Assembly: GCF_964204645.1 (NCBI RefSeq)
Contig: NC_134034.1
Span: forward strand, 4,934,914 to 4,998,913
Source: Tubulanus polymorphus
Lineage: Eukaryota; Animalia; Nemertea
DNA: 64,000 bases
Direction: 5' to 3'
In this document: one piece after another, positions 3,861 through 49,302 of the stretch
How the letters are laid out: every line of letters begins with the position of its first letter
Position numbering within the stretch: the first letter of the stretch is position 1
Translations under genes and position numbers: made by a program
The notes under the pieces: generated by a model
Databases searched by the model: none
What the model was told of the DNA's origin: nothing
Seen by the model: only the letters and a program-made list of their open reading frames with translations

Positions 3861-3940
3861 GCCGAGCAGCACGGTGGGAGCCCACCATACTCCTGGTAGT
3901 CTACCTGGAGTATAGTGGGCTCCCACCGTGCTGCTCGGCA
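3860..3940. repeat. 81-bp palindrome at the transposase breakpoint
   Basis: tgccgagcagcacggtgggagcccaccatactcctggtag-t-ctacctggagtatagtgggctcccaccgtgctgctcggca: 40-bp arms with 2 mismatches. Confidence 0.9.
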
Positions 3941-4321
3941 ACCACAATATATATAATTTGCATTTTTAACATCCTGAGGTCTGTGATAAAGTGTAAGGTG
4001 CTCGTTTTCTATTCAAAGTAACCAAAATTGATTTTAAATGAAGGTAATTTATAACATTGAAATTATATTTAATGTAAATTGGGATATCAGTTATTTATAG
4101 TTGTTATTGTTGTTTGTTAACATTTGATAATATTTTATTGTTGTTGGCTCATACTTAATCATTCTTTTAATTAGAATTGGAGTTGATCTAAATTAATAAG
4201 TGTTATGTTCAAATACTTAGCTAGATTTTAAACACAGGTTGTTCAAAATGGACGAAACCTGGCATGTCGGGAGCATAATACATTTATAGAGGGCCTAACC
4301 TCTACCTGCACCACCAGAAAC

Positions 4322-4398
4322 GACATGTTTATGGATGACTGTGAGGCATAATATCTCAGGTAGCCATACTGATGATTGTTGATAAGATGAAACATGTC
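4322..4398 (+). ncRNA. Type III hammerhead ribozyme (variant) in element O
   Basis: Stem III gacatgt/acatgtc; GUU cleavage site after 4329; stem I tatgg...ccata; core CTGATGA at 4369-4375; stem II t-tgtt-gat-aaga-t (one mismatch, U.U closing pair); GAAA. Confidence 0.7.
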
Positions 4399-14817: not shown

Positions 14818-15558
14818 CTCTGGGTACATGAGCTATTTTAATGCAAGAATTTAAGTTGAAGTTAGTTGCAAGAATTTAAGTTGAAGTTAGTTGTCCATCG
14901 TGCATTTTGTCTAGTTGTAGTTATAGTTTGATATAAAAGTGACAGCTCCTTAATTGCAATTTGAAATCTGCTTTAACTAATTAACAGTTTTTGTGCTCTT
15001 AATCGGACACGGTAGGCTGGTATTGTGTGTTATGATATAGAAATTGAATAGTTTGTGATGCACACGCCTACAAAAAATAATGAAAATTGAAATTTGTTTT
15101 TTTATACATTGTAGTTTTCGTAATTTTTATACTAATGGCTAATCAAACGTGTTAATTACTGGATGATCAATGATTTCTTAGCCAATCGAATTTGGCTAAT
15201 GTTTTTATTACTGAGAGAGTTTTAGGATTTCAAAAGCGTTGTTTCGTATATAGATGAAAAATGATTACAGTATTATTGTTTTAAGTTGTGTAATGGAATC
15301 AAAATTGGATTAATTTCAAATAAAGCTGGTGACTAGAATAAAATTATTGAATAGATTACTTTATTTCCTCCATGAAGGCATAAAATAGAGTGGCTTGGCG
15401 CTTTGATTAATAAATGAGTTTTTACTCTGTGACCATGTGACCAGGGCTCCAAATTGAAAATTATGAGCTATCCCACCCAGATAATAATTTTCGAGTCACT
15501 CAAAAAAGAAAGTAACCAAGCCTACAGAGAATTGACGCACCAGAAGATATACTCTGGT

Positions 15559-16112
15559 CAGGCCTGTACATAGAGGGGGTTCGGACAAACCCCCTTTTGT
15601 GGTGCCCTTTTTCGAATTTTTGACGTCCGAAAATGTTCTCAAATTTTTTCTCAGAAATTTCATCTCCAAAGAAATAAGGGCACATGTTGTCGTCCCTATC
15701 AATCACAAAAGTAGAAAAGAGCATGCACATTTTTACAAGACAAGGAGATAGTTTTCAACAAAAAGGTTTCCATGTTTATTCCCTGGAAACTACATCTCAA
15801 TGCAGTAAATTTCCTACAAAGCAATTTGCATCAGGACTTCATTTGTTGCTTGGAAATTGAACCATAAAGCAGTAATTTTTCTGGGGGAGGACCCACTCAT
15901 AAATGCCCTTCTTTTATAAGTTGTGTTCCCAGTTCCCAGTAGTCCCTGGATCCACCCATTGCAGGAAATTGATCTAAAAACAGGTAAAATATCAAAATTT
16001 TCTCACCTGGTCCGGGTACCGCCACACCATATTGGATGCCTTTTTTGGTGACATTGCCCTTCCTCCTCCCCCCAAGTAGAACCCCCCTAAAATAATCCTG
16101 TCTACGGGCCTG
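15559..16112. mobile_element. Small MITE-like insert with apparent 5-bp TSD
   Basis: Ends caggcctgtaca / tctacgggcctg; ctggt on both flanks. Confidence 0.5.
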
Positions 16113-16745
16113 CTGGTATCCAGTTGGGATATAGAGATGAACCATTCGAGTATCCCCTGGGTCCTTGGACACTGCCTATTTATAGCGGAAAAAAATCGTG
16201 ATGGGTTACTTCAGAGGAATAAGCCAGAAAAATTTGTGTAGGCAGTCGGATCTCTTTGGGCCGAAGGCTCACCAACCCAAAAAGTCAGGTTTTGAGAAAG
16301 TCACAAATATAGGAAAAACAACATAATTTGATAAAAAACTTTTTTTTCAAATCATCTTTGTTACATTACAAAAGATACATTATCAAACAGATACCTGAAT
16401 GAATACAATTTTTTTAAAAATTTTCCAGCAGATAGGAACCTAAACTAGGGGTCCATGGACCTCTTGCCCCATTGAGAGTGTAAGACCCATGAATATTGCA
16501 ATTAGGAAATTAACTGATTTCTACAGTGGTTTACTAGCAGTCTATTTTTGCAACTGCGAAATACAAGTGTGCAAGAAAAAAAAACTTTCAAAGCAGCAAC
16601 ATAAAATTTCAAGTTTCATAACTAATAATAATAATTCTAACTTTTTTTGGTTTGATTGCCATGATAAAATTCATTTAAAAAGTAACATTAATACGCCTAA
16701 ACTGAACTACTTCGACTTTTATTGCTAAACTAACTAATTCCATAT

Positions 16746-17282
16746 GAGTAAAATCCCACAATAAATGAATTAAATGTTTATCTAAAACATATAAGAAATA
16801 TTTCGGGTGGTTACTACCACCCTTCTTCAGTCTAAAATGACTTGCCAAATATACACACAGTATTAATGAAATAGGACGCGAATCGCTGCACATTACGTTA
16901 TGGGGACTAGAGCACTGACATATCTTGAAAGAAGTTTATTATGGGGGCCGAAACCATTATTAAAGAATGATCGGAATGAGTGTTAAATCAAAGCAGATTC
17001 AAATATATGTCGTTTAGTGCGACTATTGTTGGGAAAAATAATATTGGCTCCAGAAAAATCAAAATTATGTCCGGTAACCAATGAATGAGAGACTACCCCA
17101 CTTTCTAATTTAACCCCATTGAATACAACCCGTTTCCCCACCTATTTCATGTATTAATACTGTGTGTGTATTTGGCAAGTCATTTTAGACTGAAGAAGGG
17201 TGGTAGTAACCACCCGAAATATTTCTCATATGTTTTAAATAAACATTTTATCATTTAATCCATTTATTGTGGGATTTTACTC
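16746..17282. mobile_element. MITE with ~120-bp TIRs, GAG...CTC ends and ATAT TSD (Sola2-like)
   Basis: gagtaaaatcccacaataaatg...cacacagtattaat is mirrored at ~17153-17282; atat lies on both flanks. Confidence 0.8.
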
Positions 17283-17328
17283 ATATCGTTTTATCACGGA
17301 TATTGTGATCTCAAATTGACTCATTTAA

Positions 17329-17758
17329 CTAATTCCAGCTGTTAAGGGAGTGTTTTATAAATGAGAAAGCAGAAGGGCGTTCATCATTATTGGATGGAAG
17401 TTCAGGTGCTGCTGTTGTATTCTGTAATAAGGAATCAGTTGTTTCCGGCCTCCATTGTGCCCTTGATGGGCTTGCATACTGACGAGGTTCTAGAATTTGA
17501 TAATTATTCATTGGCGGTTCCATGGCTCCTAACTGTGGTCCAAACGGCTGTTGCATATAATTACTTTGCCCAAACATACCACTCATGAGCTGAAATATTT
17601 TCAGTTCATGAGCCCTATCCTCTCTACGCATGCGTTCCTCTTTTTCACGCTCTTCTTTTCGCATTTGTTCTTCAAAAATTTCTCATCTGACCGCTGTTGA
17701 AACTGAAGAAATGATTCAAACAGTTCACCTTGGCGGGTGAGCTTCTTCTTTGGAGGTG
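17329..17758 (-). pseudogene. Last exon of the Harbinger second (Myb/SANT-type partner) gene
   Basis: Convergent to the transposase; ttttcag acceptor, then PPKKKLTR...MRKEEREKEERMRREDRAHELKIFQLM, a charged coiled coil typical of these partners. Frameshifted; the Myb domain itself is not visible. Confidence 0.6.
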
Positions 17759-20700
17759 CTGAAAAATTGAAAAACTCGTGACATATACTTAAACCACTTA
17801 TAGTACAATGTCCATACAAAATTATAGAATTCGTACAGATATGGACACCCAGAATTCCATGATCCACGCTGATCAATCACAAAGGTGCACCAGGGGCCCT
17901 CCCCCAGAAAATGGATTTTTCCAAACTGTGAGATCGATTAGTGAATCTGGACATGATATATTGTGAGAGGAAATAACATGAATCACCATATTCATCAACT
18001 AAAACAATTGATATAGATTGATATAGATTCAATCATATCCGCATTCTAAAAGAGATGAAAATAAGTTTCACCAAACTCGGGGAAGAGGAATGTGAAATAT
18101 GTATCGAATACAAGAAGCATCGATGCAGTATGGAAGATTGTCAGATATGTCAATTCCATGAAAAGCACCAAGATTGTGTGAAAGAAGCAAGAAGTATGTA
18201 TAAGAATGATGCCAGTTAAATGTATGATGGTGAAACTATGATTGTATCCGCTGATTTAGAAAAGGTTATAATGTTACCCCGGTTACCTGGTGTGAAGACA
18301 GCTCTGTTTACAAGACGACTGGTTGCCTTCAACGAGACTTTTGCACCACTTGGAGCAAATTATTCGAGTATGAAACCTACAGGTGTGATTTGGACAGAGG
18401 CAGTAAGTGGAAGAAATGTCGAAGATATTGCCAGTTGTTTCGTCAAATTCCTGAGATCATCCCCGTGCCGAGATACGGAAAATATTATCATTTACTGTGA
18501 CAACTGTAGTGGTCAGAATAAGAATTGGACCCTATATAGTGCTCTGTGTAGAGAGGTTAATATGAATGACGAAAACAAAACTGTAGTCTTGAAATACCTT
18601 GAGAAAGGTCACACATTTATGAGTACGGATACATTCCACAGTAAAGTTGAGAGAGAAATGAAAAGGCGAAAAAATGTATATGATTTAGACGATTACAAAT
18701 CAGTCATTGAAAAAAATGGCACTGCTATCGTCATGCAACATACCGAATGTCCAGTGGAAGATATACTTTGAAACCACACTTAGCAGCGGTTAAATCGTTA
18801 TGTTTAAAGCTGGATCGACTAAGATTTTCTGGAAAGAATCCTACAACTCAGTAGAATATAATGAGCGAGTTTCTGAAAAAAAAAGGTTGCTGCCATGATC
18901 CTTAACCGCCAAAATATGTATCAGCATCGTGAAAATGACAGGGGTATACCAGGTCCAAAGAAACAGGATATTTGCTCAAAACTATGTCCACTTATACCGA
19001 TGAATAGAAGGTCGTATTGGGAAAACTTAGCCATCAATGATAGTTCTCGCGACTTGATAAGTCAATATGAATAGACTAAAGAGCATGATTAAGCATAGGC
19101 TAATAATTATGAGTTTTGTTTACAAAGTTTGTATTCGTTATATTAGAATAATACATACATTGCAATGTTACTGTTTATTGCACCGTTGTTCGGATCAATC
19201 GAAATATAGGGGATACTGTAGATCCACGAATTTAAAAATGAGATTTTATGTTAAACGTCCTTAGATCGACTTATCTGAAATAGATTGTCATAATTTGTTA
19301 GGTATACTTGGGATAAATTTTTTCATCATTATACATCAATTATGAATAATAATGAAATTTGTTTTTGATATTGAATTTTCAGTCTGATGTGTCCATTAAC
19401 TTCCTTTTGTTAAAGAAAATGGCCCTGTAAAAAGTGTTTTTATGATCGATTATACGACAGAAGGAAGTAAGTTGACGTACTTTGTTAAATATGCCAGATA
19501 TTTAAACGATATTTTCTGACATAAAGAAGTATATCAAAAACTACCAGAATCCTGCATAAATTACGGAAATAACTTCATATATAGGTACTAGGGGGATACT
19601 TAAACACTATGAGGTATAATTCTTAATGTTCTGTGATTTTTTAGTTTGGAGGGGCAATGGTTTTTAACGAAAAATCTTTCACGCCAAATTTCTCAAAACA
19701 GTACACAAGGAACATACACCCTTTTGTCAGAAATGGGCAGAATTGTTCTATCAGTCGGCAATTAATGGCCAAAGAATTATTTTCAGTGAACAACAATTGC
19801 TGAGCAATCTCCTGGAGATTATCCGATTAAATCCAGTACAATTAGAGGACAGTGAAATAAGCCCAGACACCGAAAACCAGGTAAGAATCAAACCAACATC
19901 AGCTCGTCAAGTATCACACGAAGCACAGAAAAAGAAATTAGCCGAGAAACTCATGCAAGCACGTGACAAGCGGAAAATAGCAATAAGCAACAAGCGGAAA
20001 TTGCCTTTTTATTCCGCTGATACCCAGCTTCTTGTCGGCCTAAAAATTCAACATCGCTTCAAAGTGGATAGTGAGCTTGCTTGGTTTGATGGAGTTGTCA
20101 CTCAAATAGCCAGGTATCATGATGACCCCCTTAAAACATTATTTGTGGTCGGATATGATGATGATGACAACGACGATGAGGGTGACTGGGAATTTCCACT
20201 GCTGAAAGACCTAAGTATTGGTGACCTTATTGTACTGGATGGCGACAAAAGAAGTGCTGTCTATTCGTGTACCAATTCACGAATGTTTTGTTTAATGAAA
20301 AATAGTCATTTAATTCTAGTCATATGAATTCTTTCCTTTCTAGTCAAATGAATGCTGGTCATTCTAGTCCATCAAATGCTGGTCATTCTAGTCAAATTAA
20401 TTCTAGTCAAAAGAATTCTATTTACATTCTCACTGTTCATATATTATTTATCACTTTAGTTATTCATGCATTGCTAGTCATATCCATTTGCATGAATTTT
20501 GTTATTTCCTTTAACAATCAATGTTTTAGCAGTAACTTATACATTTTCTTCATTTCAGAACCTAGATATTCTATAAATCAATATTACTTTTTGCATGATT
20601 TAATGTCACTGCTAACAACACATTCAGTTATATTTTATTTTCATATATAGGTTCAACTGTAGTGGCCCGGGTGTAAGTATAAACTACCTAGAGTATGGTG

Positions 20701-21577
20701 GGCTCCCACCGTACTGCTCGGGCAGATTTGAAGAAAAAAAAATCTCTCTTTTAATTCTAGGTTCATTCGTATTCATTTGAAAAAAAGTCGATTTAATTGT
20801 GATTCGATTTCTTTTCTGTATCAATAAACAAATCAATTTTAGCAATTAATCAATTATCAATTTTACTCATTACATTCATTTTTTTGTGTTTACTTGATCC
20901 ATTAACAAAAGGCCTACATTTTTCGATTTAATTGTGATTCGATTTCTTTTATGTCAATAAATTAATTTGTAAGATTATATTTATTCACTTTTTTAAAAAT
21001 ACTTGACTAATTAATCTCTTTCAAATATGGTTCGACCTGTGATACTGTGGTGTCCTGGGTGTGGAGTATAAACTACCTGGAGTATGGTGGGCTCCCACTG
21101 TACTGCTTGGGCCCTAAGTATCTCGATCTGGACCTGTCCTTATTTGATTTCTTAAAAAATACTGTGACTATTTTTGCAATGGGAATTTTTGCTTTTTCTA
21201 TGTTCAGTGGCTGTGATAATAATGTGGATAGTTCTGTGATATATGCTCTAATCAATAATTACCGTGCTCGCTGCTAATGCTATGGCCTTTTTTGATGATT
21301 TTTGTATATCCCTAATTGATGTATATTCCGAATTAAGTTAGATTTGTGTGTTATTGTGTTTAATAGGAACCAAAAAACAAAACAAAATTGATAAAATTAG
21401 AAAAAAAACCCCAAAAATTTTATTTGAATTTAGTTGTTTGATTTTTTTATCGGGAGAACTTACTTGAGAAGCATAGGTTAGGTTAGCTTAGGATAGGTTA
21501 AGTTAGGTGTACAGCGGCATATCCAGCAGCCTGTAATATCAGATGTTGATAATACCATTGGATATTACAGGTTGCTC

Positions 21578-21642
21578 GACATGTCTGCAACCACTCAACT
21601 TAGATAGTTGCACTGATGAGTCCTCGAGGGACGAAACATGTC
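21578..21642 (+). ncRNA. Type III hammerhead ribozyme upstream of TatD (copy A)
   Basis: gacatGTC^tgcaac-loop-gttgca-CTGATGA-gtcc-tcgag-ggac-GAA-acatgtc. Core is canonical and stems I-III are perfect; cleavage predicted after 21585. Confidence 0.93.
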
Positions 21643-21710: not shown

Positions 21711-22603
21711 ATGTATCGAGTTATCAGATCGGGCTGGTGTGAATCTGCTTTAAACAGCGAAGTGTGTGTTCGTAGGCGGTGTGGAATGAGACACTTGGGC
21801 CGGCAGATGTGTCTATTTGACAGCCATTGTCATTTAGACATTCTGCAGACAAGGCACGGCTTGTCCTTGTCGGGGTGTAGCCTACCAAGCTGTTTCCGGG
21901 GCTGCGTTACTGTGTTCTGCCATCCTTCCAGGTATAAACTACTTGAGAAGTTGGTGAACCAGGACAATGTCTGGGCAGCCGTGGGTTTGCACCCCAAGTG
22001 TGCGGATGGTTACCGTGAGGCGCTTCCTCGCATCAAGCGGATGCTGGAGGCCTCCCCAAAAGTGGTGGCTCTTGGGGAGTGTGGCTTGGACTACAGTGTT
22101 CCAAGCCCTCGGAGGTGTGAACAGCGCGAGGTGTTCACGGAGTTGCGTCGCTTGGCCGTACGGAGGGGGAAGATTTTGGTTGTGCACACGAGGGAGAGAG
22201 ATGCTGTACGTGACTGTTTTGCAATTATGCAACAGGAATTGCCACGCTCTCACCCGGTGCACATGCATTGTTTCCCGGAAGGATGGGTCTCTGCAAAACC
22301 CTACCGAGATTATTTTACTAATTTGTGTTTTGGAGTTACAGGTATGGTAACGGACCCCCGGCAAAACTAAGGGGTTCGTGATCTAATCCGCAATGTTTCT
22401 CTTCACAGGTTATTGCTAGAGACTGATGCACCGTATTTGCCGCCGAAAACAATGCCGGACTACCGACTTACCCATCCTGGTCATGTTTTTACCAGGCTCT
22501 GGCTGTAGCTGACATAAAACAATTGTCAGTTACAGAAGTAGGAGTCCGTACATATGAAAACGCGGTAAAACTCTATGGTTTACCAGCACTTACTGAACAC
22601 TAG
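21711..22603 (+). pseudogene. tatD: TatD-family nuclease, copy A (premature TAA at 22368 and a 1-nt deletion at ~22488)
   Basis: DSHCHLD, AVGLHP, LGECGLDY, VVHTRE, HMHCF, and LLETDAPYL after the stop; near-identical to the intact copy B gene. Confidence 0.92.
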
Positions 22604-22788
22604 TTGAGTGGTGTAATGATGATTGTGTAAGAACATATACTACTTTCAGGCGGCAGATATTTGAGTGTGCTCTATCTCTTAGCAAATGTAATACATTAAA
22701 AATGGCTCAGGAATCAAGACAGGTGATCTCATCTATTAAATGTTTATTTCTGTTCCAGACAAGCCTCCTCCGATGATGGATTGAACCG

Positions 22789-22873
22789 ATGCATGTATGT
22801 AGCTACTAATTTTACACTTTAGTTTTCTATTAGCGAGCTGCACTGATGATTCCTGGATGGATGAAACATGCAT
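22789..22873 (+). ncRNA. Type III hammerhead ribozyme downstream of TatD (copy A), U.U-closed stem II variant
   Basis: atgcatGTA^tgtagct...agctgca-CTGATGA-t-tcc-tggat-gga-t-GAA-acatgcat; 8-bp stem III and 7-bp stem I; cleavage predicted after 22797. Confidence 0.8.
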
Positions 22874-25034
22874 TGGATCATTCCAGTTAACATAAGCTGT
22901 AAAAACCTGAAACGACTAAAAATATACATTAGTATATAAGATATCGTCAAAACACAGGCGTTATGGATTTTGGTCACGTGGTCACATTTCCCAATTTTAA
23001 AGAGGAATCTCAAGGAATGTAAGGTAGACACATTCTTTATTTACCTAAAACCGCCATAAGATTCTACTAGGTAAATTCATGTTAAGGTAATGCCCAGTGA
23101 AAGGAAGATATTCAAATACTGGTCGGTTTGATACCCATCATGACATAATTTGTTACGATCGCATCAAGCACATTGTTACCATGGCAACAATATAGGCGGC
23201 CATTTTACTTTTTCAAAATGGCGGACATCCTTATCGTCGTGGCAACTTTTTATATCCTATCGGTTGTTATTGAATGAATTCTGGTTGATTTGATACCTAT
23301 CATGGCATACTTTGCTACAAGTGGATGGAGGAATTACTGTCATGGCAACAATGTTTTCGGCCATTTTACTTTTTTCAAAATGGCGGACACCATTGTTATC
23401 ATTACAACTTTTTACCTCCCATCGGTTGTTATTGAATCCATTCTTGTCGGTTTGATACCAATCATGGCATACTTCATATCTAATCACGTTATTGCCGCGT
23501 TTGGCAGCCATATTGGATTTCAATATGGCCGCCGTTACTATTATATGGTTTCCACGGCAACTCTTTTCTCTTTTTTGTAAGATGTTATTATTTTTATGTC
23601 AGATCATGTATAATGATACTCTGGATCTGAAAATAACGTTAATATTGTCATTTTTCTCAATATTGCATATAAGCTGCTTAATTAATTATGCGCTTAATTA
23701 ATTATGCAAATTAGACTAATTAACATAATGATTAATTAGTTTTAACATCATCATTTTAAATAAGACTTTGGTCCTTAGGTCCTCTGTGAATTTGGTAACC
23801 ATTGCATCAAAATTCCAAAAGATATAACCATTTACATATGAATATCCTATTTCATTCAGCTCAAAAACAGCCAATTTGGTCACCATTTGACCTCTTGACC
23901 TTTAATTCATTTCTCATGAAGACTTTGAAGGCTGGAAAGTGTACGACTAATTCCTTCATAACTTTTGAACCGCTTGACCGATTTTGGTTCTGTAAATTGC
24001 TATGATCTTATATTCAACCCTTCTTTCACATATGCCTTTGAAATTGTTTCTGTAGTGTTTAGAAAATTTTCACTTGAAAACCCTACTTAAAAGCAGCAAA
24101 ACCTTGACACTTGCTGTCTGACTCTTTAATTGAAAATGAACTAAAGTGTAATGCGCAATCACATGACAAAAATACCCAAATTTTCCGCCCTTCAATTGCT
24201 TATAACTTTTGAACCGCTTGACCGGTTTTGATTCTGTAAATTGCTGTAGGCTATGTAGGGTTTTCAGATCACGTGACCAAAATCGGCCATAGCGCCGGGA
24301 AACCTCCACTTCAAATTTGTTTTGCTCTATAAAAACTATATTTTTAATTGAAAGTATATGAATTGTGTTTTTAAATAAAGATATTAATGATAAAAAACGA
24401 TGTTGAAAATATTACATTGATCCGAAACATATTCGCCGAGATATTAGCAGCTGAGTCGGGAGCGCGCTGTAAATTTGAACACTAGCAGGTGCGCGCTCTA
24501 TATTTCGCCATATTTAGGTGCGCGGAGACTAAGGCATGCTCCCATAAAAGCCTCCACTGCAGCGACGGACGCCATACTAGTAAGATGCAAACCCCGTAGC
24601 GTTCTTCTCGACTTTCGTAAGTTTCGTCTGCTATGCCGTACTAGTTTTCGGAGCGAATATTCCAGATTTTATGACTATTTAAACTTTTTGGAGCGATAAA
24701 AAACACAGATAAGCAATATTTATCAATAAGTTCTCTCCCCCAGGCCTAAAAATTAAGTAGATTTAGGATTTATTTCAATAGGAATTTTAGCGATAGAAAT
24801 TCGATCGGCTCTCGACTTTTGACCTAAACTTGGCTCATTCCTGGAAATTCCGCCGCTCGGTCGCGCTAATCTACTTCCGGTTCACTTCCCGGTTCGCGTA
24901 ATCTTTGTTTACATTCGTTTTAGCCCCTTGTTTTGTCCTTTTTACGTCGTTTTTGTTAGAATATCGCCCTGAAATCGTTTGTATATATCTATTTTATTGT
25001 TATTGACTGTTATTGTTAACTTATAAGGTAAATC

Positions 25035-27348
25035 ATGGCCACAAATCAGCAAGTTTACGAGCACTTAGTCCATAACGCCGGTAAGATGAGTATGAATTTA
25101 GTAGTTGAAGGTTTTTTAGAGCTATATCCGATTTATAAACAGAGCCAAGAGCATTATAAGACATTATATCCTAGGTTAAAGAGAGTTCATACAAGAGCCC
25201 AGAGTTTTATTCGCAACCGCAAATGGCGTCCAAATGCGACCGAATCATTTTTACAATCGACTTTTCCTGTCACGCCCGGACCTTCGCGTGTAGAAACCAT
25301 GCAACAAGCTGCGACCACTTTACGTGAAGAGGCACTCACAGAGCGATGTATCAACATTAATACCGAAAATAAGTCTCTGAAGCGTAAACTGTGCAATGTG
25401 TAGGTCCAAAACTCATGTCTCGAAGAAAAAATATATTCAGTTCAAACCTTAAATGAGACATATCATCTAAGATTGCAAGAATTGACAGGTAAAATGGATG
25501 AACTAACAAAAAAAATATCCAATGGGGCTGAACTCTCTGCATCACTGACGTTGTTAAGAGCAGAACATGATACCCTCATAGAAAAATTTGACACGCTCTG
25601 CGCTGAACAACAAGCATCTGAACTGCAGACAACAAAGCGCCAGAAATTAGATAAAGACCTCATGAGTCGTAAAATAAAGAGGCGCGATGAAAAAATTAGA
25701 TCACTTGATAGAATAACAAAAGAAAATTTTAAAGAAAATAAGCAACTATCAAGCCAGATGCAAGAAATTGAAAGCGATTTGCAAGCGAAAATGGAACAGT
25801 TACAACTATCTGAGGTCCGTAACACCAATTTAAAAAGTGAAGTTAACCAGCTTAAGTCAAGAATCAGCCAGCTTAAATATCGTAACACCGTAAAAATATA
25901 AGAAGAGCGTAAAGAGACTGATTTAAAAAAAATTGAATTTGCAAATCGAACAAGCGGTTTTCAGTGATGTAAAAAACCAAGTCCTTCTCGCTGGGTGCCG
26001 TGCATTAGGCATCATTGATAAGGTAATCACTGGGCCATTCTGGAGAATCCTAAATGAAGCAAACAACGTCCTCGACATGAATCACCATCTCCTACAAATG
26101 AAATCAAAATTAATTGATTGGTGTGAAGACAGGCAGCCAATAATGCAGGGTGACATAATGTTTCCAGATGCAGAGATACACAAAGACGCATTGTATGATT
26201 CACTTTTCAAGCAAACGACAAGTCAGGAATTTGAATGTCTCACCCAACAAGCACTGGAGCTGTTAATGCACGGATTGCTATTAATCCTCGAACGACAAGC
26301 GCAGGATCAGCTTCCAGGTGGAAAATACTTCAATCCTGATGAAACGACGAAGGCGTCATACACGAATGTCCCGACCAGCAATGTGATCTCTGAGCGTGAC
26401 TTCGCAATCTTGGATTTACTAATCCGAATCAAACCAGCAAGCAACCCAGAATCTCTCGAAACGCTGACCCTGTGGATGAACAACAGAACATCAAACTGGC
26501 TAGAAAAAAAAATTTAGACGATAGGTCAGCATTATTTAAAAAAGCCAGATCAAGCGTTGATGTAATGAAAAAAAAATTTAAAGAGAGACGGGAAGCCATT
26601 CGGAGTCATAAGTCATCCCTGCTACTGGCCAAACAACAAGAAAAAGTGAAAGCCGAGGAGAGAGTGCAAACAAAAAAAAATTAAGGCTACCAACAACTTA
26701 GCCGAATTTGGTGCGGTATGGGTCAGTTCTAGTATAGTCCGAGAAGAACTCGACAAACTTGAGCCAGCACTTCGAAAAAAAACCATCCTGTATCAGATAA
26801 ATTTCCATAAACAGGTCCTTCACTCTAAAGGTGACAAAGAATTGTTCTATCAGTCGAGAACAATTAATGGCCAAAGAATTGTTTTCAGTGAACAACAATT
26901 GCTGAGCAATCTCCTGGAAATTATCCGATTAAATCCAGTACAATTAGAGGACAGTGAAATAAGCCCAGACACCGAAAACCAGGTAAGAATCAAACCAACA
27001 TCAGCTCGTCAAGTATCACACGAAGCACAGAAAAAGAAATTAGCCGAGAAACTCATGCAAGCACGTGACAAGCGGAAAATAGCAAACCAAAAAAAGAAAT
27101 TGCCTTTTTATTCCGCTGATCCCCAGCTTCTTGTCGGCCTAAAAATTCAACATCCCTTCAAAGTGGATAGTGAGCTTGCTTGGTTTGATGGAGTTGTCAC
27201 TCAAATAGCCAGGTATCATGATGACCCCCTTAAAACATTATTTGTGGTCGAATATGATGATGATGACAACGACGATGAGGGTGACTGGGAATTTCCACTG
27301 CTGAAAGATCTAAGTATTGGTGACCTTATTGTACTGGATGGCGACTAA
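25035..27348 (+). pseudogene. hAT-type transposase of copy B with a ~1.07-kb internal deletion at ~25940
   Basis: Matches copy A except that the equivalent of A 9361-10431 (both catalytic Asp motifs and CxxH) is replaced by a short filler. SERDFA and the Spin/Ssty-like C-terminus are retained. Confidence 0.88.
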
Positions 27349-27997
27349 AGAAGTGCTGTCTATTTGTGTACCAATTCACGAATGTTTTTTTTTAATGAAA
27401 AATAGTCATTTAATTCTAGTCATATGAATTCTTTCCTTTCTAGTCAAATGAATGCTGGTCATTCTAGTCCATCAAATGCTGGTCATTCTAGTCAAATTAA
27501 TTCTAGTCAAAAGAATTCTATTTACATTCTCACTGTTCATATATATTATTTATCACTTTAGTTATTCATGCATTGCTAGTCATATCCATTTGCATGAATT
27601 TTGTTATTTCCTTTAACAATCAATTTTTTTTGCAGTAACTTATACATTTTCTTCATTTCAGAACCTAGATATTCTATAAATCATTATTATTTTTGCATGA
27701 TTTAATGTCACTGCTAACAACACATTCAGTCATATTTTATTTTCATATATAGGTTCAACTGTAGTGGCCCGGGTGTGGAGTATAAACTACCTAGAGTATG
27801 GTGGGCTCCCACCGTACTGCTCGGGCAGATTTGAAAAAAAATTTCTCTCTTTTAATTCTAGGTTCAACTGTAGTGGCCCGGGTGTGGAGTATAAACTACC
27901 TAGAGTATGGTGGGCTCCCACCGTACTGCTCGGGCAGATTTGAAAAAGAAAATCTCTTTGAATTCTAGGTTCATTTGTATTCATTTGAAAAAAAAAC

Positions 27998-28566
27998 TCG
28001 ATTTAATTGTGATTCGATTTCTTTTCTGTATCAATAAACAAATCAATTTTAGTAATTAATCAATTATCAATTTTACTCATTACATTCATTTTTGTGTTTA
28101 CTTGATCCATTAACAAAAGGCCTACATTTTTCGATTTAATTGTGATTCGATTTCTTTTATGTCAATAAAAAAATCAATATTAGTAATTAATCAATTATCA
28201 ATTCTACTCATTACATTAATTTTTTTGTGTTGACTTGATCCAATAACAAAAGGCCTACATTTTTCGATTTAATTGTGATTCGATTTCTTTTATGTCAATA
28301 AATAAATCAATTTTAGTAATTAATCAATTATCAATTTTATTCATTACATTCATTTTTTGTGTTTACTTGATCCTTTAACAAAAGGCTTACATTTTTCGAT
28401 TTAATTGTGATTCGATTTCTTTTATGTCAATAAATATATCAATTTTAGTAATTAATCAATTATCAATTTTATTCATTACATTCATTTTTTGAGTTTACTT
28501 GATCCTTTAACAAAAGGCCTACATTTTTCGATTTAATTGTGTTTCGATTTCTTTTATGTCAATAAA
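27998..28566. repeat. Internal minisatellite, ~132-bp unit x ~4.3 (x ~1.3 in copy A at 20788-20960)
   Basis: tcgatttaattgtgattcgatttctttt starts at 27998, 28131, 28264, 28396 and 28528. Confidence 0.9.
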
Positions 28567-29185
28567 TTAATTTCTAAGATTATTATTTATTCACTTTTTT
28601 AAAAATACTTGACTAATTAATTTCTTTCAAATATGGTTCGACCTGTGATACTGTGGTGTCCTGGGTGTAGAGTATAAACTACCTGGAGTATGGTGGGCGC
28701 CCACTGTACTGCTTGGGCCCTAAGTATCTTGATCTGGACCTGCCCTTATGTTTTTTCTTAAAAAATTCTGTGACTATTTTTGCAATGGGAATTTTTGCTT
28801 TTTCTATGTTCAGTGGCTGTGATAATAATGGATAGTTCTGTGAAATATGCTCTAATCAATACTTACCGTGCTCGCTGCTAATGCTATGGCCTTTTTTGAT
28901 GATTTTTGTATATCCCTAATTGTTGTATATTCCAAATTAAGTTAGATTTGTGTGTTATTGTTTTTAAAAGGAACCAAAAAACAAAAAAAAAATTGATATA
29001 ATTAGAAAAAACCCTCAAAAAATGTTATTTGAATTTAGTTGTTGTTTGATTATTTTATCGGGAGAACTTATTTGAGAAGCATAGGTTAGGTTAGCTTAGG
29101 ATAGGTTAAGTTAGGTGTACGGCGGCATATCCAGCAGCCTGTAATATCTGATGTTGATAATACCATTGGATATTACAGGTTGCTC

Positions 29186-29250
29186 GACATGTCTGCAACC
29201 ACTCAACTTAGATAGTTGCACTGATGAGTCCTCGAGGGACGAAACATGTC
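29186..29250 (+). ncRNA. Type III hammerhead ribozyme upstream of TatD (copy B)
   Basis: Identical to 21578-21642; GUC cleavage predicted after 29193. Confidence 0.93.
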
Positions 29251-29318
29251 AATAGTATTTATAAAATTCCTTCTTTTCTTTTTTAGGTCAGGAGCCCTTA
29301 GTTTAGACTGTTTGCATC

Positions 29319-30212
29319 ATGTATCGAGTCGTCAAATCGGGCTGGTGTGAATCTGTTTTAAACAGCGAAGAGTGTGTTCGCAGGCGGTGTGGAATGAGAC
29401 ATGTGGGCCGGCAGATGTGTCTATTTGACAGCCATTGTCATTTAGACATTCTGCAGACAAGGCACGGCTTGTCCTTGTCGGGGTGTAGCCTACCAAGCTG
29501 TTTCCGGGGCTGCGTTACTGTGTTCTGCCATCCTTCCAGGTATAAACTACTTGAGAAGTTGGTGGACCAGGACAATGTCTGGGCAGCCGTGGGTTTGCAC
29601 CCCAAGTGTGCGGATGGTTACCGTGAGGCGCTTCCTCGCATCAAGCGGATGCTGGAGGCCTCCCCAAAAGTGGTGGCTCTTGGGGAGTATGGCTTGGACT
29701 ACAGTGTTCCAAGGCCACGGAGGTGTGAACAGCGCGAGGTGTTCACGGAGTTGTGTCGCTTGGCCGTACGGAGGGGGAAGACTTTGGTTGTGCACACGAG
29801 GGAGAGTGATGCTGTACGTGACTGTTTTGCAATTATGCAACAGGAATTGCCACGCTCTCACCCGGTGCACATGCATTGTTTCCCGGAAGGATGGGTCTCT
29901 GCTAAGCCCTACCGAGATTATTTTACTAATTTGTGTTTTGGAGTTACAGGTATGGTAACGGACCCCCGGCGAAACTCAGGGGTTCGTGATCTAATCCGCA
30001 ATGTTTCTCTTCACAGGTTATTGCTAGAGACTGATGCGCCGTATTTGCCGCCGAAAACAATGCCGGACTACCGACTTACCCATCCTGGTCATGTTTTTTA
30101 CCAGGCTCTGGCTGTAGCTGACATAAAACAATTGTCAGTTACAGAAGTAGGAGTCCGTACATATGAAAACGCGGTAAAACTCTATGGTTTACCAGCACTT
30201 ACTGAACACTAG
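29319..30212 (+). CDS. tatD: TatD-family metal-dependent nuclease, 297 aa, intact and intronless ORF
   Basis: All TatD metal-ligand motifs are present: DSHCH, GLHP, GE(Y)GLDY, VHTRE, HCF and LLETDAPY, ending with TYENAVKLY. An in-frame stop upstream fixes the ATG. Confidence 0.95.
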   Translation: MYRVVKSGWCESVLNSEECVRRRCGMRHVGRQMCLFDSHCHLDILQTRHGLSLSGCSLPSCFRGCVTVFCHPSRYKLLEKLVDQDNVWAAVGLHPKCADGYREALPRIKRMLEASPKVVALGEYGLDYSVPRPRRCEQREVFTELCRLAVRRGKTLVVHTRESDAVRDCFAIMQQELPRSHPVHMHCFPEGWVSAKPYRDYFTNLCFGVTGMVTDPRRNSGVRDLIRNVSLHRLLLETDAPYLPPKTMPDYRLTHPGHVFYQALAVADIKQLSVTEVGVRTYENAVKLYGLPALTEH

Positions 30213-30398
30213 TTGAGTGGTGTAATGATGATTGTGCAAGAACAGATACTACTTTCAGGCGGCAGATATTTGAGTGTGCTCTATCTCTTAGCAAATGTAA
30301 TACATTAAAAATGGCTCAGGAATAAAGACAGGTGATCTCATCGATTAACTGTTTATTTCTGTTCCAGACGAGCCTCCTCCGATGATGGATTGAAATGT

Positions 30399-30483
30399 AT
30401 GCATGTATGTAGCTACTAATTTTACACTTTAGTTTTCTATTAGCGAGCTGCACTGATGATTCCTGGATGGATGAAACATGCAT
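30399..30483 (+). ncRNA. Type III hammerhead ribozyme downstream of TatD (copy B), U.U variant
   Basis: Same sequence as 22789-22873; GUA cleavage predicted after 30407. Confidence 0.8.
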
Positions 30484-32533
30484 TAGATCATTCCAGTTAA
30501 CATAAGCTGTAAAACCTGAAACGACTAAAAATATACATTAGTATATTAGATATCGTCAAAACACAGGCGTTATGGATTTTGGTCACGTGGTCACATTTCC
30601 CAATTTTAAAGAGGAATCTCAATGAATGTAAGGTAGACACATTCTTTATTAAACTTTAACTAAAACCGCCATAAGATTCTACTAACTAAATTCATGTTAA
30701 GGTAATGCCCAGTGAAAGGAAGATATTCAAATTCCGGTCGGTTTGATACCCATCATGACATAATTTGTTACGATTGCATCAAGCACATTGTTACCATGGC
30801 AACAATGAAGGCGGCCATTTTACTTTTTCAAAATGGCGGACACCCTTATCGTCCTGGCAACTTTTTATATCCTATCGGTTGTTATTGAATGAATTCTGGT
30901 TGATTTGATACCAATCATGGCATACTTTGCTACAAGTGGATTGAGGAATTATTGTCATGGTTACAATGTTGGCGGCCATTTTACTTTTTTTCAAAATGGC
31001 GGACACCATTGTTATCATGACAACTTTTTACCTCCCATCGGTTGATATTGAATCCATTCTGGTCGGTTTGATACCAATCATGGCAAACTTCATATCTAAT
31101 CACGTTATTGCCGCGTTTGGCAGCCATATTGGATTTCAATGTGGCCGCCGTTACTATTATATGGTTTCCACGGCAACACTTTTCTCTATTTTGTAAGATG
31201 TTATTATTTTTATGTCAGATCATGTATAATGATACTCTGGATCTGAAAATAACGGTAATATTGTCATTTTTCTCAATGTTGCATATTAATTGCTTAATTA
31301 ATTATGCAAATTAGACTAATTAACATAATGATTAATTAGTTTTAACATCATCATTTTAAATAAGACTTTGGTCCTTAGGTCCTCTGTGAATTTGGTAACC
31401 ATCGCATCAAAATTCCAAAAGATATAACCATTTACATATAAATATCCTATTTCATTCAGCTCAAAAACAGCCAATTTGGTCACCATTTGACCTCTTGACC
31501 TTTAGTTCATTTCTCATGAAGACTCTATGGCTGGAAAGTGTAAATTTCAGCCGACTAATTCTTTCATAACTTTTGAACCGCTTGACCGATTTTGGTTCTG
31601 TAAATTGCTATGATCTTATATTAAACCCTTCTTTCACATAGGCCTTTAAAATTGTTTCTGTAGTGTTTAGAAAATTTCCACTTGAAAACCCTAGGCTATG
31701 TTTATTTACCCCCTTCTTTCATTTAAGATATTAAAAAGACATATAGGACACAAGAAATCCCTACCCAAGGATGCCACTCTACCACCTAGTGGCTGATTTG
31801 GACATGTAAGAGCTTTCAATCTGAGAAGGTAGGTAATATTCGTTAAGTGCGTGAAAACCCCCGAACCTACCCTAAATAATATTGGGACAATTTGAATTTT
31901 TTATGGATATACCTACCAAAATCGGCCACCAATTAGTAAGCCTATGTGCGACAACTAAATCGGCCAAGCGTACGTGCGATCCCAAGTCTCAAAACTTCAG
32001 ATTTTAACTGGTTTTTCTTATTCGTCGACCAAAAAACCGCAGCCTCCATGGCCAGTTACAAACACGTGTGTGATCTCCGCGCCGACCCACCAGAAGAGAA
32101 AAAACATTATATCCAGTGTTTGGATGCGTGAACAATACTCACTGTTTGTGATAATTTGGATGGATGGTTCCATCGCAGGTGTGGGCATCCTCGCTTTCCA
32201 GGGGTCCGGTATCGCTCCCCGAACTCGCTTCCACCAGCCCCCTGGCCTCGCGACCCGTGATTTCATTACTGGCGCTGTTGCGCACGATGTCATATATCGA
32301 TTTGCGAAATACTTAATTGTTGGGTAAATCGTTCGCTGTTGGTCCATTTCACGGGAAACCAACAGATATCCGGGCGGCCATCCCCGCCAAAAAGACAAAC
32401 TTCCTGTGTTCGTGAAAATGACATCAATGCGTGATAATGTCAGTAGGTGGCGCTGTTAATCAGAAAGATAAACTCGTGTTTTCGTAAAAAAGACATCGAT
32501 GCATAAAAATATCTGTAGGTGGCGATACTAGGG

Positions 32534-38685: not shown

Positions 38686-39156
38686 CTAAACAACAATTTT
38701 TCTTCTATTTAGACACTGACAGCCGACTGATATGTGAATGGTCGTAGGTTTCCACTCGCCATGATTGTTTCGCATGTGCACACGTACTGGCACTTCAACT
38801 GGCTCACAAACCCTATCGCCCGAGAGGGAATTTTGATTGCAACAACGCACTTCTTTTATCCATTTCGGACTTCGATTTGGATCACAATTTGCAACAGTGT
38901 CCCATGGGCAAGGGGAACGGGAACGTCTGTCACCCTTTGGGAATTGCAATCGGCAGAATGTGTCCCATTTGAAATCAAAGACTCTTCGATAACACAACGG
39001 TTCGGTCGAAAGGCTTTCTTTGTTCATCTCCTTTTCGCTTAATTCAACATTCACTAGGTGGAGGGATCGTCGCAGATTGTGATTTCGCCCGGGTATTGCA
39101 AAGGTTGCGCATTCTACTAACAAAGTTACAGCAATTACAACTAGAATAGCTTGCAT
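38686..39156 (-). CDS. IL17: Interleukin-17 family cytokine, 156 aa
   Basis: Signal peptide; RSRSPCPW...DPNRSPKWIKEVRCC...CEPV.VPV.V...ISVGCQC cystine-knot signature. Confidence 0.92.
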   Translation of the reverse strand: MQAILVVIAVTLLVECATFAIPGRNHNLRRSLHLVNVELSEKEMNKESLSTEPLCYRRVFDFKWDTFCRLQFPKGDRRSRSPCPWDTVANCDPNRSPKWIKEVRCCNQNSLSGDRVCEPVEVPVRVHMRNNHGEWKPTTIHISVGCQCLNRRKIVV

Positions 39157-48877: not shown

Positions 48878-49302
48878 TCCTGGTCTATTTTAATAATAGA
48901 AAGTTTGGATAGATGTATTCCTCAGTAACTTTCGGTAGTTCTAGCTAAGACAACTACAAACGCAAGACCCTGTAATTTGACGAAGAGCAGACGATTAAAA
49001 TATACACAGATTTATTCCTTAAAGCGAGGTTCATCATAAAGTGACATTAATAGATATGTGATGATATATGAGTATAAATGATACAGATTAAATAAAAAAC
49101 GTGTTTATCTTAATGATTAGTATACTGTCGACTTATTTCATAATACTTAAATACGAAACTAATGTTCTCTGATATCTTGGCTGCGACCATTGATTTCTCC
49201 TATTGCTGTTCCCTCTATGCCGCTGGTGTCCCCTGTAGTGCTGTTGCCGGAACTGCTGCTGTTGGAACTGCTGCTGCTGCTGCTGGAACTGCGGCTGTTG
49301 GA

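What the first reader, a model, noticed from the sequence alone, without database searches (positions are those of the whole stretch)
29186..30483. TatD nuclease gene bracketed by two hammerhead ribozymes inside a hAT DNA transposon: candidate retrozyme-like, self-excising or circular coding RNA
Seen: in both copy B (29186-29250 and 30399-30483) and copy A (21578-21642 and 22789-22873), a type III hammerhead lies ~70 nt before the TatD ATG and another ~190 nt after its stop, all on the sense strand. Established: hammerhead cleavage leaves 5'-OH and 2',3'-cyclic phosphate ends, the substrates of RtcB-type ligases, and tandem hammerheads are how retrozymes and viroid-like RNAs make circles. Those RNAs are typically non-coding or retroelement-linked rather than cargo of cut-and-paste transposons. 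Inference: double cleavage releases 29194-30407 (1214 nt; 1212 nt in A) holding the whole TatD ORF. The two ribozymes differ in stems I and II but share the stem III core catgt/acatg, so the ligated junction gcatGUA^ugcaac...CUGAUGA...GAAacaug rebuilds a complete hammerhead, as in retrozyme circles. I know of no described transposase + ribozyme-TatD-ribozyme system, but cannot verify novelty without a search.
Basis: partly seen in the sequence, partly recalled or inferred. Interest (0 to 1): 0.95.

Follow-up and report, generated by a model that had tools for sequence, protein, structure and literature searches.

The report
Ribozyme pair flanking a TatD gene
In a ribbon-worm genome, a TatD-type nuclease gene sits between two self-cleaving hammerhead RNA motifs that are also kept in other invertebrates; I found no published description of this arrangement, but whether it makes a circular coding RNA or just trims an ordinary messenger is untested.

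Summary
A canonical type III hammerhead (29186-29250; Rfam 43.5 bits, E 6e-7, below the 48.5 gathering score) lies 68 nt before an intact 297-aa TatD ORF. A complete variant hammerhead (30399-30483, U.U instead of G10.1-C11.1, missed by Rfam) lies 186 nt after the stop, on the same strand.

Both motifs look selected:
- There are 0 differences in 150 nt between copies A and B, against 4.6% overall.
- The 5' motif recurs before a 59%-identical TatD in another species, and the 3' variant after a 47%-identical TatD in a third. Both show compensatory stem changes.

- The upstream gene is an uncharacterised Spin/Ssty-domain protein. No hAT domain was found.
- The TatD unit has four copies, all in one local tandem array, so it is not a dispersed transposon.
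- No RNA data exist, so cleavage and circles are untested.
- Two signals suggest an ordinary linear mRNA with the ribozymes just outside it: a polypyrimidine-AG (and TATA-like) signal between the 5' ribozyme and the ATG, and an AATAAA 84-89 nt before the 3' cleavage site in three lineages.
- The variant ribozyme also occurs without TatD at two other loci.

Verdict: real and unusual. It is most likely a transcript-processing device; a coding circle remains possible.

The parts
29107..29185 (+). Long imperfect hairpin directly upstream of the 5' ribozyme. Its 3' arm runs into the stem III 5' strand.
   Evidence: Inverted repeat with arms 29107-29153 and 29164-29210. The MFE fold of 29100-29260 forms the hairpin at the expense of stem III. 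A hairpin of different sequence sits at the same place in L006.
29186..29250 (+). Canonical type III hammerhead (copy B). Predicted cleavage is between 29193 and 29194.
   Evidence: Rfam RF00008 43.5 bits, E 6.1e-7. The MFE fold is the three-way junction. There are 0/65 differences from copy A. An orthologous motif in L006 shows compensatory changes in stem I.
29260..29286 (+). TATAAAA box (29260-29266), followed by a polypyrimidine tract ending in AG (29270-29286). This is either a core promoter or a 3' splice site. An in-frame stop at 29304-29306 makes 29319 the true start.
   Evidence: Read from the sequence. PPT-AG lies 2-32 nt before the ATG in L005, L007, L028/L029 and L031 as well.
29319..30212 (+). 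Intact intronless TatD ORF, 297 aa, with an N-terminal C-x8-C-x4-C-x3-H motif.
   Evidence: PF01026 full length, E 3.5e-48. Catalytic motifs and three Cys are invariant in the alignment of 7 homologues.
30321..30326 (+). AATAAA poly(A) signal, 86 nt before the 3' cleavage site.
   Evidence: The same hexamer lies 84 nt before the site in the old paralogue L003 and 89 nt before it in L005. It is mutated in the pseudogene copy A.
30399..30483 (+). Variant type III hammerhead (copy B) with U10.1.U11.1. Predicted cleavage is between 30407 and 30408.
   Evidence: Parser. MFE is the hammerhead fold, z -2.6. There are 0/85 differences from copy A, while 30395, 30396, 30398 and 30485 differ. It is conserved after the TatD of L005 with compensatory changes.
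21578..21642 (+). Copy A 5' hammerhead, identical to copy B.
21711..22603 (+). Copy A TatD pseudogene (premature stop at 22368-22370 and a 1-nt deletion).
22787..22875 (+). Copy A variant 3' hammerhead, with a core identical to copy B.
25035..27348 (+). Upstream gene of unit B. It is a member of an uncharacterised Spin/Ssty-domain family, seen here as four ORF pieces.
   Evidence: No hAT domain was found.
4240..4398 (+). Unit O: remnant of the canonical ribozyme (GGACGAAAC...) followed about 85 nt later by a decayed U.U variant hammerhead. There is no TatD between them.
   Evidence: The fold does not form stem II, z -0.29. Better-preserved copies lie on C2 and C4.
24267..24284 (.). 18-nt inverted-repeat partner of 30575-30592 (17/18 complementary, around a CACGTG palindrome). 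The pair encloses the Spin-like gene, TatD and both ribozymes.
   Evidence: It may be a promoter motif rather than a terminal repeat: a similar palindrome lies upstream of the L021 ORF.

Best explanation
The two hammerheads are conserved RNA-processing elements. They delimit the TatD transcription unit inside a tandem array of [Spin/Ssty-protein gene + TatD] units in a nemertean genome.

The canonical upstream ribozyme is preceded by a long hairpin. It would cut precursor or read-through RNA coming from the upstream gene just before the TatD leader. That leaves a hairpin-capped 3' end upstream.

The downstream U.U variant would cut the nascent RNA about 86 nt after the AATAAA, which is beyond the likely poly(A) site. 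That severs read-through into the next unit.

The translated TatD message would then be an ordinary linear mRNA. It would start either at a TATA-driven site or at the acceptor at 29287, and it would be polyadenylated near 30340-30350. The doubly cleaved 1214-nt RNA would be a by-product or a minor alternative product.

Shown: the motifs, their conservation and their positions relative to the signals. Inferred: cleavage in vivo, the mRNA ends and the insulating role.
For: - Both motifs are real and constrained.
- AATAAA lies 86, 84 and 89 nt before the 3' cleavage site in B, L003 and L005.
- A PPT-AG lies directly before the ATG in all TatD homologues examined, including those with no ribozyme. 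TATAAAA is at 29260-29266.
- The same ribozyme type lies downstream of other ORFs with no TatD present: 145 nt after a Harbinger-type DDE ORF in L013 (44.2 bits), and after Spin-like genes at O and C4, plus a further TatD-free copy on C2.
- L005 has the 3' ribozyme but no 5' one within 663 nt. This fits 'each ribozyme belongs to the 3' side of a gene'.
- Inserted hammerheads cleave Pol II transcripts co-transcriptionally and efficiently in human cells (PMC2288634).
Against: - There are no RNA data at all.
- Hammerhead cleavage leaves a 5'-OH, which is a poor substrate for the 5'-3' exonuclease thought to drive termination (own knowledge). The terminator role is therefore not straightforward.
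- If the PPT-AG is a real acceptor, the 5' ribozyme lies inside TatD's own 5'-UTR intron and would cut its own precursor.
- No AATAAA precedes the 5' ribozyme.
- The 5' ribozyme keeps the same short distance to the ATG in L006 (47 nt). This suggests a link to TatD rather than to the upstream gene.
- The compatible palindromic stem III strands are what a circle-forming system would need.
Confidence: 0.4

Rival explanations
1. Double self-cleavage releases the 1214-nt TatD RNA. An RtcB-type ligase or the ribozyme itself closes it into a circle, and the junction rebuilds a full hammerhead. The circle is translated cap-independently. This would be a cellular coding analogue of retrozyme or deltavirus-like circles.
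For: - Two sense-strand type III ribozymes bracket the whole ORF in both copies.
- The stem III strands of the two motifs are interchangeable (ACAUGU palindrome), so both the circle junction and the ligated flanks would re-form hammerheads.
- In L006 a GUC^UGCAG site at the contig end, about 470 nt after the stop, is also compatible with the 5' ribozyme body.
- Tandem canonical-plus-variant modules about 85-180 nt apart (O, C2, L005 loop I) look like small retrozyme-type units.
- Type III hammerheads are typical of circular RNA agents (PMC13725137).
Against: - No RNA evidence exists.
- The AATAAA and the acceptor/TATA signals suggest a normal linear mRNA.
- The 3' motif lacks the highly conserved G10.1-C11.1 pair (PMC4209133), so it may be slow.
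- The upstream hairpin competes with stem III.
- No IRES has been identified, and the ORF has a stop, so there is no endless frame.
- No species has yet been shown to have both complete ribozymes apart from the two recent copies in this genome.
Confidence: 0.2
2. A self-destruct or conditional switch. The ribozymes remove the cap and the tail from TatD transcripts to keep a potentially harmful nuclease silent. The upstream hairpin (and perhaps a factor bound at the U.U pair) decides whether cleavage happens.
For: - A hairpin overlaps or abuts the stem III 5' strand in both the window and L006. The two hairpins differ in sequence, and in the MFE fold the hairpin displaces the ribozyme fold in the window.
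- The non-canonical U.U pair is conserved in three lineages while the stem II pairs beside it covary.
- A 3'-UTR hammerhead that lowers expression is known in mammalian Clec2 genes (cited in PMC7761336).
Against: - The 3' ribozyme lies after the AATAAA, so it would not remove a tail added at the normal site.
- The variant ribozyme is kept at loci without TatD.
- No ligand or protein partner is known.
Confidence: 0.12
3. Ribozyme-dependent translation of a linear downstream cistron. The Spin-like gene and TatD are co-transcribed. Cleavage at 29193/29194 frees a 5'-OH TatD RNA whose compact hammerhead leader promotes cap-independent initiation. This would resemble what is reported for HDV-like ribozymes of non-LTR retrotransposons and for hammerheads in RNA-virus 5' UTRs.
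For: - The ribozyme body stays on the 5' end of the TatD fragment, 68 nt before the ATG. The distance is similar in L006 (47 nt).
- Both genes are on the same strand in every unit.
- Self-cleavage alone can induce low-level cap-independent translation (PMC13725137).
Against: - Reported efficiencies are low (below 1% for ribozyme-only constructs).
- A TATA-like box and a PPT-AG lie between the ribozyme and the ATG.
- L005 and L007 have no 5' ribozyme within 268-663 nt but keep the ORF.
Confidence: 0.1
4. The ribozymes are relics of a small mobile tandem-hammerhead module that landed around or next to TatD and has no present function for the gene.
For: - The genome is full of hammerhead-bearing repeats, according to other readers' notes. 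One fold-back example was read here.
- The module occurs without TatD on C2, C4 and at O.
- The copies in L003, L004 and O are decayed.
Against: - There are 0/150 differences between A and B inside the motifs against 4.6% overall, with substitutions abutting the 3' motif on both sides.
- The cores are near-identical across species whose TatD proteins are only 47-59% identical, and the changes in the stems are compensatory.
- This ribozyme type is found only at these few loci in 268 Mb.
Confidence: 0.1

Closest known systems
Plant LTR retrozymes (type III hammerhead pair, circRNA intermediates; PMC4918200, PMC7761336)
   Same: Two sense-strand type III hammerheads enclose about 0.6-1.2 kb. Double cleavage would give 5'-OH and cyclic-phosphate ends, and the rejoined junction restores a ribozyme.
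   Different: - The ribozymes here do not sit in long direct repeats.
- The enclosed segment codes for an enzyme.
- There are four copies in one local array rather than dispersed insertions.
- The host is an animal.
- The two ribozymes have been kept different from each other (G-C versus U.U) across species.
Metazoan non-LTR retrozymes and Penelope-like-element hammerheads (PMC7229834, PMC4209133)
   Same: Animal genomic hammerheads in tandem, with a palindromic stem III. The O, C2 and L005 modules, with two ribozymes 85-180 nt apart, resemble small retrozyme units.
   Different: Those are type I or minimal motifs in short, high-copy, non-coding repeats of 150-450 bp. These are type III, low copy and gene-linked.
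Gene-associated vertebrate hammerheads: intronic HH9/HH10 and the Clec2 3'-UTR ribozyme (cited in PMC7229834, PMC7761336)
   Same: Single-locus ribozymes conserved across species within or beside an mRNA, presumably acting on its biogenesis.
   Different: Those are single motifs. Here a pair brackets a whole ORF, and the second lies after the poly(A) signal rather than before it.
Deltavirus-like circular RNAs with type III hammerheads and one ORF (PMC7936874)
   Same: About 1.2-1.7 kb of RNA carrying one ORF plus type III hammerheads.
   Different: Those are replicating RNA agents with a ribozyme in each polarity and a rod-like fold. This is a chromosomal locus with both ribozymes on one strand, and Rfam finds no ribozyme on the antisense strand.
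HDV-like ribozymes at the 5' ends of non-LTR retrotransposons and hammerheads in RNA-virus 5' UTRs (PMC13725137)
   Same: A self-cleaving motif a short distance upstream of an ORF that processes a co-transcript and may permit cap-independent translation.
   Different: Different ribozyme class or topology and different genetic context. Nothing has been shown for this locus.
TATDN2-type TatD nucleases of animals
   Same: The best named relatives are arachnid TATDN2 proteins (36-37% identity). The catalytic motifs are intact.
   Different: This is a short (about 300 aa) single-coding-exon form with an N-terminal CCCH-like motif. It belongs to a small clade seen so far only in this genome, one NCBI assembly and a few metagenome or Logan contigs.

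Membership tests
Hammerhead ribozyme, type III (Rfam RF00008) | Score at or above the curated gathering threshold (48.5 bits) | tested here: not met
   The 5' motif scores 43.5 bits (E 6.1e-7). The 3' motif is not reported at E<=10. Nothing appears at gathering.
Hammerhead ribozyme, type III (Rfam RF00008) | Conserved core CUGAUGA ... GAAA with an N-U-H cleavage triplet, and three helices with helix III open | tested here: met
   Both motifs meet this: GUC^ for the 5' motif and GUA^ for the 3' motif. Stems are III 7-10 bp, I 6-7 bp, II 3-5 bp.
Hammerhead ribozyme, type III (Rfam RF00008) | G10.1-C11.1 pair closing helix II (highly conserved in canonical hammerheads, PMC4209133) | tested here: inconclusive
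   Met by the 5' motif. The 3' motif has U.U, and this is conserved in B, L005 and the C2/C4 copies.
Hammerhead ribozyme, type III (Rfam RF00008) | Helices supported by covariation among relatives | tested here: met
   Six sequences: 93% of cells paired, 5 pairs with changes on both sides, score 0.325 against 0.192 in shuffles (0/500). Slid controls give 18-51% paired.
Hammerhead ribozyme, type III (Rfam RF00008) | Self-cleavage | not testable with these tools
   No RNA runs are available. An in vitro transcription assay is needed.
Retrozyme | Ribozymes embedded in direct terminal repeats (LTR type) or in identical tandem units (non-LTR type) | tested here: not met
   A self-comparison of the window shows no repeat joining the two ribozyme regions. 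They share only the motif itself.
Retrozyme | Many dispersed copies | tested here: not met
   There are four TatD-bearing copies, all on C10 within about 65 kb. This ribozyme type is found only there, plus two TatD-free loci.
Retrozyme | Non-coding insert; circular RNA intermediates | tested here: not met
   The insert encodes an intact TatD. Circles cannot be tested.
hAT DNA transposon | Transposase with hAT dimerisation, BED or RNase-H-like DDE domains | tested here: not met
   There are no such Pfam hits at E<=10 in the unit's ORFs, nor at E<=0.01 in intact 829- and 856-aa paralogues. Only Spin/Ssty is found. The Atlas names nothing. A remote fold-level relationship was not tested.
hAT DNA transposon | Terminal inverted repeats with 8-bp target duplications; dispersed insertions | tested here: inconclusive
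   One 18-nt inverted pair (24267/30575) is built on a CACGTG palindrome, and no target duplication was examined. The TatD unit is not dispersed. The O-type unit has a 96% copy on C4.
TatD DNase family (PF01026) | Full-length domain match above the cut-off, with the metal-binding motifs | tested here: met
   164.7 bits against a cut-off of 27, profile positions 1-253 of 253. The alignment of 7 homologues keeps these positions invariant: D37-S38-H39-C40-H41, G122-E123, G125-D127, H159 and C187.

The most novel reading that the evidence does not exclude
A chromosomal animal gene is expressed through a ribozyme-excised RNA. The two hammerheads cut out the TatD message. It is ligated into a 1.2-kb circle that carries a regenerated hammerhead and is translated without a cap. 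This would be a cellular, protein-coding counterpart of retrozyme and deltavirus-like circles, and a possible model for how coding circular RNA agents arise. The conserved U10.1.U11.1 motif would then be a deliberately tuned second ribozyme.
Probability: 0.17. Interest if true: 0.92.

Novelty: new variant of a known kind. Interest (0 to 1): 0.62.

Why it matters
Type III hammerheads are regarded as typical of plants and circular RNA agents, while animal genomes mostly carry type I motifs in repeats (PMC7229834, PMC7761336).

Here a pair of type III ribozymes is kept around a functional-looking enzyme gene in at least three invertebrate lineages. One of the two is a conserved variant that breaks the G10.1-C11.1 rule. 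Either main reading would be useful:
- If the ribozymes define mRNA ends or insulate neighbouring genes, this is a natural example of ribozyme-based transcript processing in an animal.
- If they release a circle, it is the first cellular coding circular RNA made by hammerheads.

The U.U variant is also a ready test case for what the 10.1/11.1 pair does in vivo.

Tried and rejected
- Rfam at gathering threshold gave nothing.
- A whole-genome RF00008 search was uninformative: only 68 of 44,313 candidates were scored.
- RNA evidence: no RNA run holds the locus. The two holders, X1 and X2, are DNA contigs of even depth with no joints at the ribozyme sites, so they say nothing about expression.
- More distant short TatD homologues have no hammerhead core in the DNA available: L008 at 34% identity with 6-kb flanks, and L028-L031 at 33-35%.
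- The metagenome pattern scan gave six loci. Four are closed-stem-III motifs with no TatD nearby, which look like the phage or bacterial kind. Only L012 and L013 belong to the same subtype, and none has TatD.
- hAT identity is not supported. No fold-level test was run.
- Retrocopy or terminal-redundancy idea: the flanks of the two ribozymes share nothing beyond the motif.
- Spliced-leader trans-splicing as the source of a cap: one full-text paper search for nemerteans found only a chaetognath transcriptome paper, which I did not open, and there were no earlier notes. This is left open, not rejected.
- A COX1 search for species identification found no mitochondrial contig. HSP70 was used instead.
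- Unit O as a precise RNA-level excision product is rejected, because a remnant of the canonical ribozyme body is still present.
- Complex prediction and structure prediction were not used, because no binding or fold claim is made.
Full report
WHAT IS THERE

The window comes from a 268-Mb animal genome. An intronless HSP70 from the same assembly is 94% identical to a Tubulanus polymorphus protein and at most 81% identical to everything else. The host is therefore most likely a nemertean close to Tubulanus. This rests on that one protein.

At 29186-29250, and identically at 21578-21642, cmscan finds Hammerhead_3 over the full model. The score is 43.5 bits with E 6.1e-7. That is 5 bits below Rfam's gathering score, which is why the default scan is empty.

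The downstream motif is not reported by Rfam at all. A rule-based parse and free-energy folding both give a complete type III hammerhead at 30399-30483 and 22787-22875:
- stem III of 8-10 bp;
- a GUA^ cleavage triplet;
- a 7-bp stem I closing a 31-nt loop;
- the CUGAUGA core;
- a short stem II (UUCC/GGAU) whose first pair is U.U instead of G10.1-C11.1;
- GAAA.

The same parser found nothing in 300 simulated 64-kb windows.

Between the two motifs lies a 297-aa ORF that matches the whole TatD_DNase profile (E 3.5e-48) and keeps the catalytic motifs. Copy A's ORF is broken.

ARE THE MOTIFS UNDER SELECTION?

Within the genome: copies A and B differ at 154 of 3321 aligned columns (4.6%; 6% in the flanks, 2.3% in the ORF). 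They differ at none of the 65 + 85 ribozyme positions. Substitutions sit immediately outside the 3' motif at 30395, 30396, 30398 and 30485.

Between species:
- L006 is a contig of NCBI assembly GCA_044232415.1 whose TatD is 59% identical. It has a canonical type III hammerhead ending 47 nt before the ATG. Stem II is the same, and there are two double compensatory changes in stem I.
- L005 is an ENA metagenome scaffold whose TatD is 47% identical. It has the U.U variant about 555 nt after the stop. Its core is nearly identical, and there are double compensatory changes in stems I and III. A 204-nt structured insertion sits in loop I, and the hammerhead is still the MFE fold.

A formal count on six family members gives:
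- 93% of cells paired;
- five pairs changed on both sides;
- a covariation score of 0.325 against 0.192 in shuffles (0 of 500 reach it);
- 18-51% pairing when the partners are slid.

The U.U pair itself is kept in three lineages (B-type, L005, and the C2/C4 copies), while a neighbouring stem II pair changes from C-G to U-A. This departure from the highly conserved G10.1-C11.1 pair (PMC4209133) therefore looks selected rather than decayed.

THE CONTEXT IS NOT A hAT TRANSPOSON

The repeated unit (about 24256-31693 for B) consists of an upstream multi-ORF gene, a spacer with 133-bp tandem repeats, a hairpin, the 5' ribozyme, TatD and the 3' ribozyme.

The upstream gene belongs to a family with intact 829-856-aa ORFs elsewhere in the genome. 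It has hundreds of uncharacterised relatives, the named ones mostly in bivalves and sea urchins. The only Pfam hit is a C-terminal Spin/Ssty domain. No hAT, BED or DDE domain appears even at E<=10.

TatD-bearing units occur four times, all on contig C10 within about 65 kb and in one orientation. Two are the recent copies A and B, and two are 78-80% identical wrecks in which both ribozymes are broken. This is a local tandem array, not a dispersed cut-and-paste family.

An 18-nt inverted pair (24267/30575) does enclose the unit, but it is built on a CACGTG palindrome and may be a promoter motif.

(a) Signals between the 5' ribozyme and the ATG. There is a TATAAAA box at 29260-29266, then an 18-nt pyrimidine tract ending in AG at 29286. 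An in-frame stop follows before the ATG. A PPT-AG lies 2-32 nt before the ATG in every homologue read, including those without any ribozyme (L005, L007, L028/29, L031). The coding exon is therefore probably either spliced to an upstream non-coding exon or transcribed from a promoter just downstream of the ribozyme.

(b) A poly(A) signal before the 3' ribozyme. AATAAA lies 86 nt before the 3' cleavage site in B, 84 nt in the old paralogue L003 and 89 nt in L005. It is the only AATAAA in L005's 564-nt 3' region. A normal poly(A) site would thus fall 55-70 nt before the ribozyme cut.

(c) A long hairpin abuts the 5' ribozyme in both the window and L006, with different sequences. It overlaps or reaches the stem III 5' strand, and in the MFE fold of the larger window segment it displaces the ribozyme.

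(d) The variant ribozyme exists without TatD.
- At unit O (window 4240-4398), a remnant of the canonical ribozyme is followed about 85 nt later by the variant, with no TatD between.
- A 96% copy of the O Spin-like gene on C4 carries the variant's core and 3' half; its stem III 5' strand is missing.
- A 290-nt copy of the module is on C2.
- The C2 copy folds well. The O copy has lost stem II.
- L005's loop I also contains a decayed canonical ribozyme body directly before the variant.
- The ancestral object therefore looks like a tandem canonical-plus-variant module.

(e) The same ribozyme subtype lies 145 nt after a Harbinger-type transposase ORF in metagenome contig L013 (44.2 bits).

INTERPRETATION

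There are no RNA data. No RNA run holds the locus, and the two holders are DNA contigs. Every mechanism below is therefore inferred.

I rank first (0.4) the reading that these are transcript-processing elements at the borders of the TatD transcription unit. The upstream ribozyme would sever precursor or read-through RNA from the Spin-like gene and leave a hairpin-ended 3' terminus. The downstream one would cut the nascent RNA beyond the poly(A) site. The mature mRNA would be linear and conventional. Hammerheads placed in Pol II transcripts are known to cleave co-transcriptionally and efficiently (PMC2288634).

The two stem III strands are interchangeable, so both the circle and the rejoined flanks would regenerate hammerheads. 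The tandem modules also resemble small retrozyme units.

Other options are:
- a self-destruct or conditional switch on a nuclease gene (0.12);
- ribozyme-dependent cap-independent translation of a downstream cistron, as reported for viral and retrotransposon ribozymes (PMC13725137; 0.1);
- functionless relics (0.1), which the conservation data argue against.

COMPARISON WITH THE LITERATURE

Full-text searches found no paper that connects the two: the two papers holding both 'hammerhead ribozyme' and 'TatD' do not link them. No paper reports a ribozyme-bracketed coding gene in an animal genome. None concerns hammerheads in nemerteans beyond one unrelated mention.

Reviews state that animal genomes mostly carry type I motifs in short repeats, and that type III motifs belong to plants and circular RNA agents (PMC7229834, PMC7761336).

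The locus fails the retrozyme criteria that could be tested: direct repeats, dispersal and a non-coding insert. It shares with retrozymes the paired type III geometry.

I therefore class it as a new variant of a known kind (gene-associated genomic hammerheads).

OTHER READERS' NOTES ON THIS GENOME

Other first-stage readers had noted the same stretch and many other hammerhead repeats in this genome. Those notes were used only as leads.

Noticed in passing
G000:C2:18751822-18751849 (-), G000:C4:10206960-10206987 (+); window 4240-4398: TatD-free copies of the hammerhead module. On C2 and at unit O it is a decayed canonical ribozyme plus a U.U variant about 85 nt apart; the C4 copy keeps the variant's core but lacks its stem III 5' strand. 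The C4 locus is a 96% copy of unit O's Spin-like gene, so this unit has moved or been duplicated between chromosomes.
   Followed up: partly
L013:1211-1935 (JGI metagenome contig Ga0256846_1005309): A type III hammerhead of the same subtype (44.2 bits) lies 145 nt after a Harbinger-type DDE_Tnp_4 ORF. The stem III/cleavage-site sequence is duplicated just upstream of it.
   Followed up: partly
L012:1758-1899: A hammerhead core of the same subtype is embedded in a roughly 38-bp inverted repeat. A GUC site follows GAAAC directly (a permuted, minimal-stem-III arrangement). It lies between inverted acyl-CoA-synthetase-like exons.
   Followed up: no
window 29319-29423 and homologues (alignment A4): The short TatD clade has a conserved N-terminal C-x8-C-x4-C-x3-H motif (three Cys invariant in 7 sequences). 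It resembles a CCCH zinc knuckle and is not recognised by Pfam.
   Followed up: partly
window 3862-3938, 27783-27933, 28675-28716: A palindromic element of about 80 nt is repeated in the spacers of units O and B, and many times on C2. It is probably a small fold-back repeat.
   Followed up: no
window 27998-28571: Tandem array of 132-133-bp repeats between the Spin-like gene and the 5' ribozyme. Copy A has a single unit (20814-20966).
   Followed up: no
window 11320-19738: Copy A of the unit is split by an insertion of about 8.4 kb. The insertion carries a PIF/Harbinger transposase ORF (13798-14817, DDE_Tnp_4 E 1.6e-40) and a DUF7869 ORF (18220-18771).
   Followed up: no
window 38686-39156 (-): An ORF with an interleukin-17 domain (PF06083, E 4.3e-7).
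   Followed up: no
window 47697-47986, 48887-49176, 51632-51920: Three 290-nt segments in perfect inverted or direct relation, plus a 99.6% direct repeat (46870-47985 and 50807-51920). This is a recent rearranged duplication.
   Followed up: no
window 32032-32400: Contig depth jumps from about 60 to 16,000-53,000 in both DNA runs, which indicates a very high-copy repeat.
   Followed up: no
L023:380-560 (G000:C10:11923779-11923959): A fold-back element with a different minimal hammerhead (CUGAUGA ... GAAAC in each arm), as other readers noted. It is a different family from the TatD ribozymes.
   Followed up: partly
L028:1-3873 (Logan ERR14368249): A 33%-identical short TatD follows a NADAR-domain ORF and a >1200-aa ORF on the same strand, tightly packed. 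The context was not examined.
   Followed up: no
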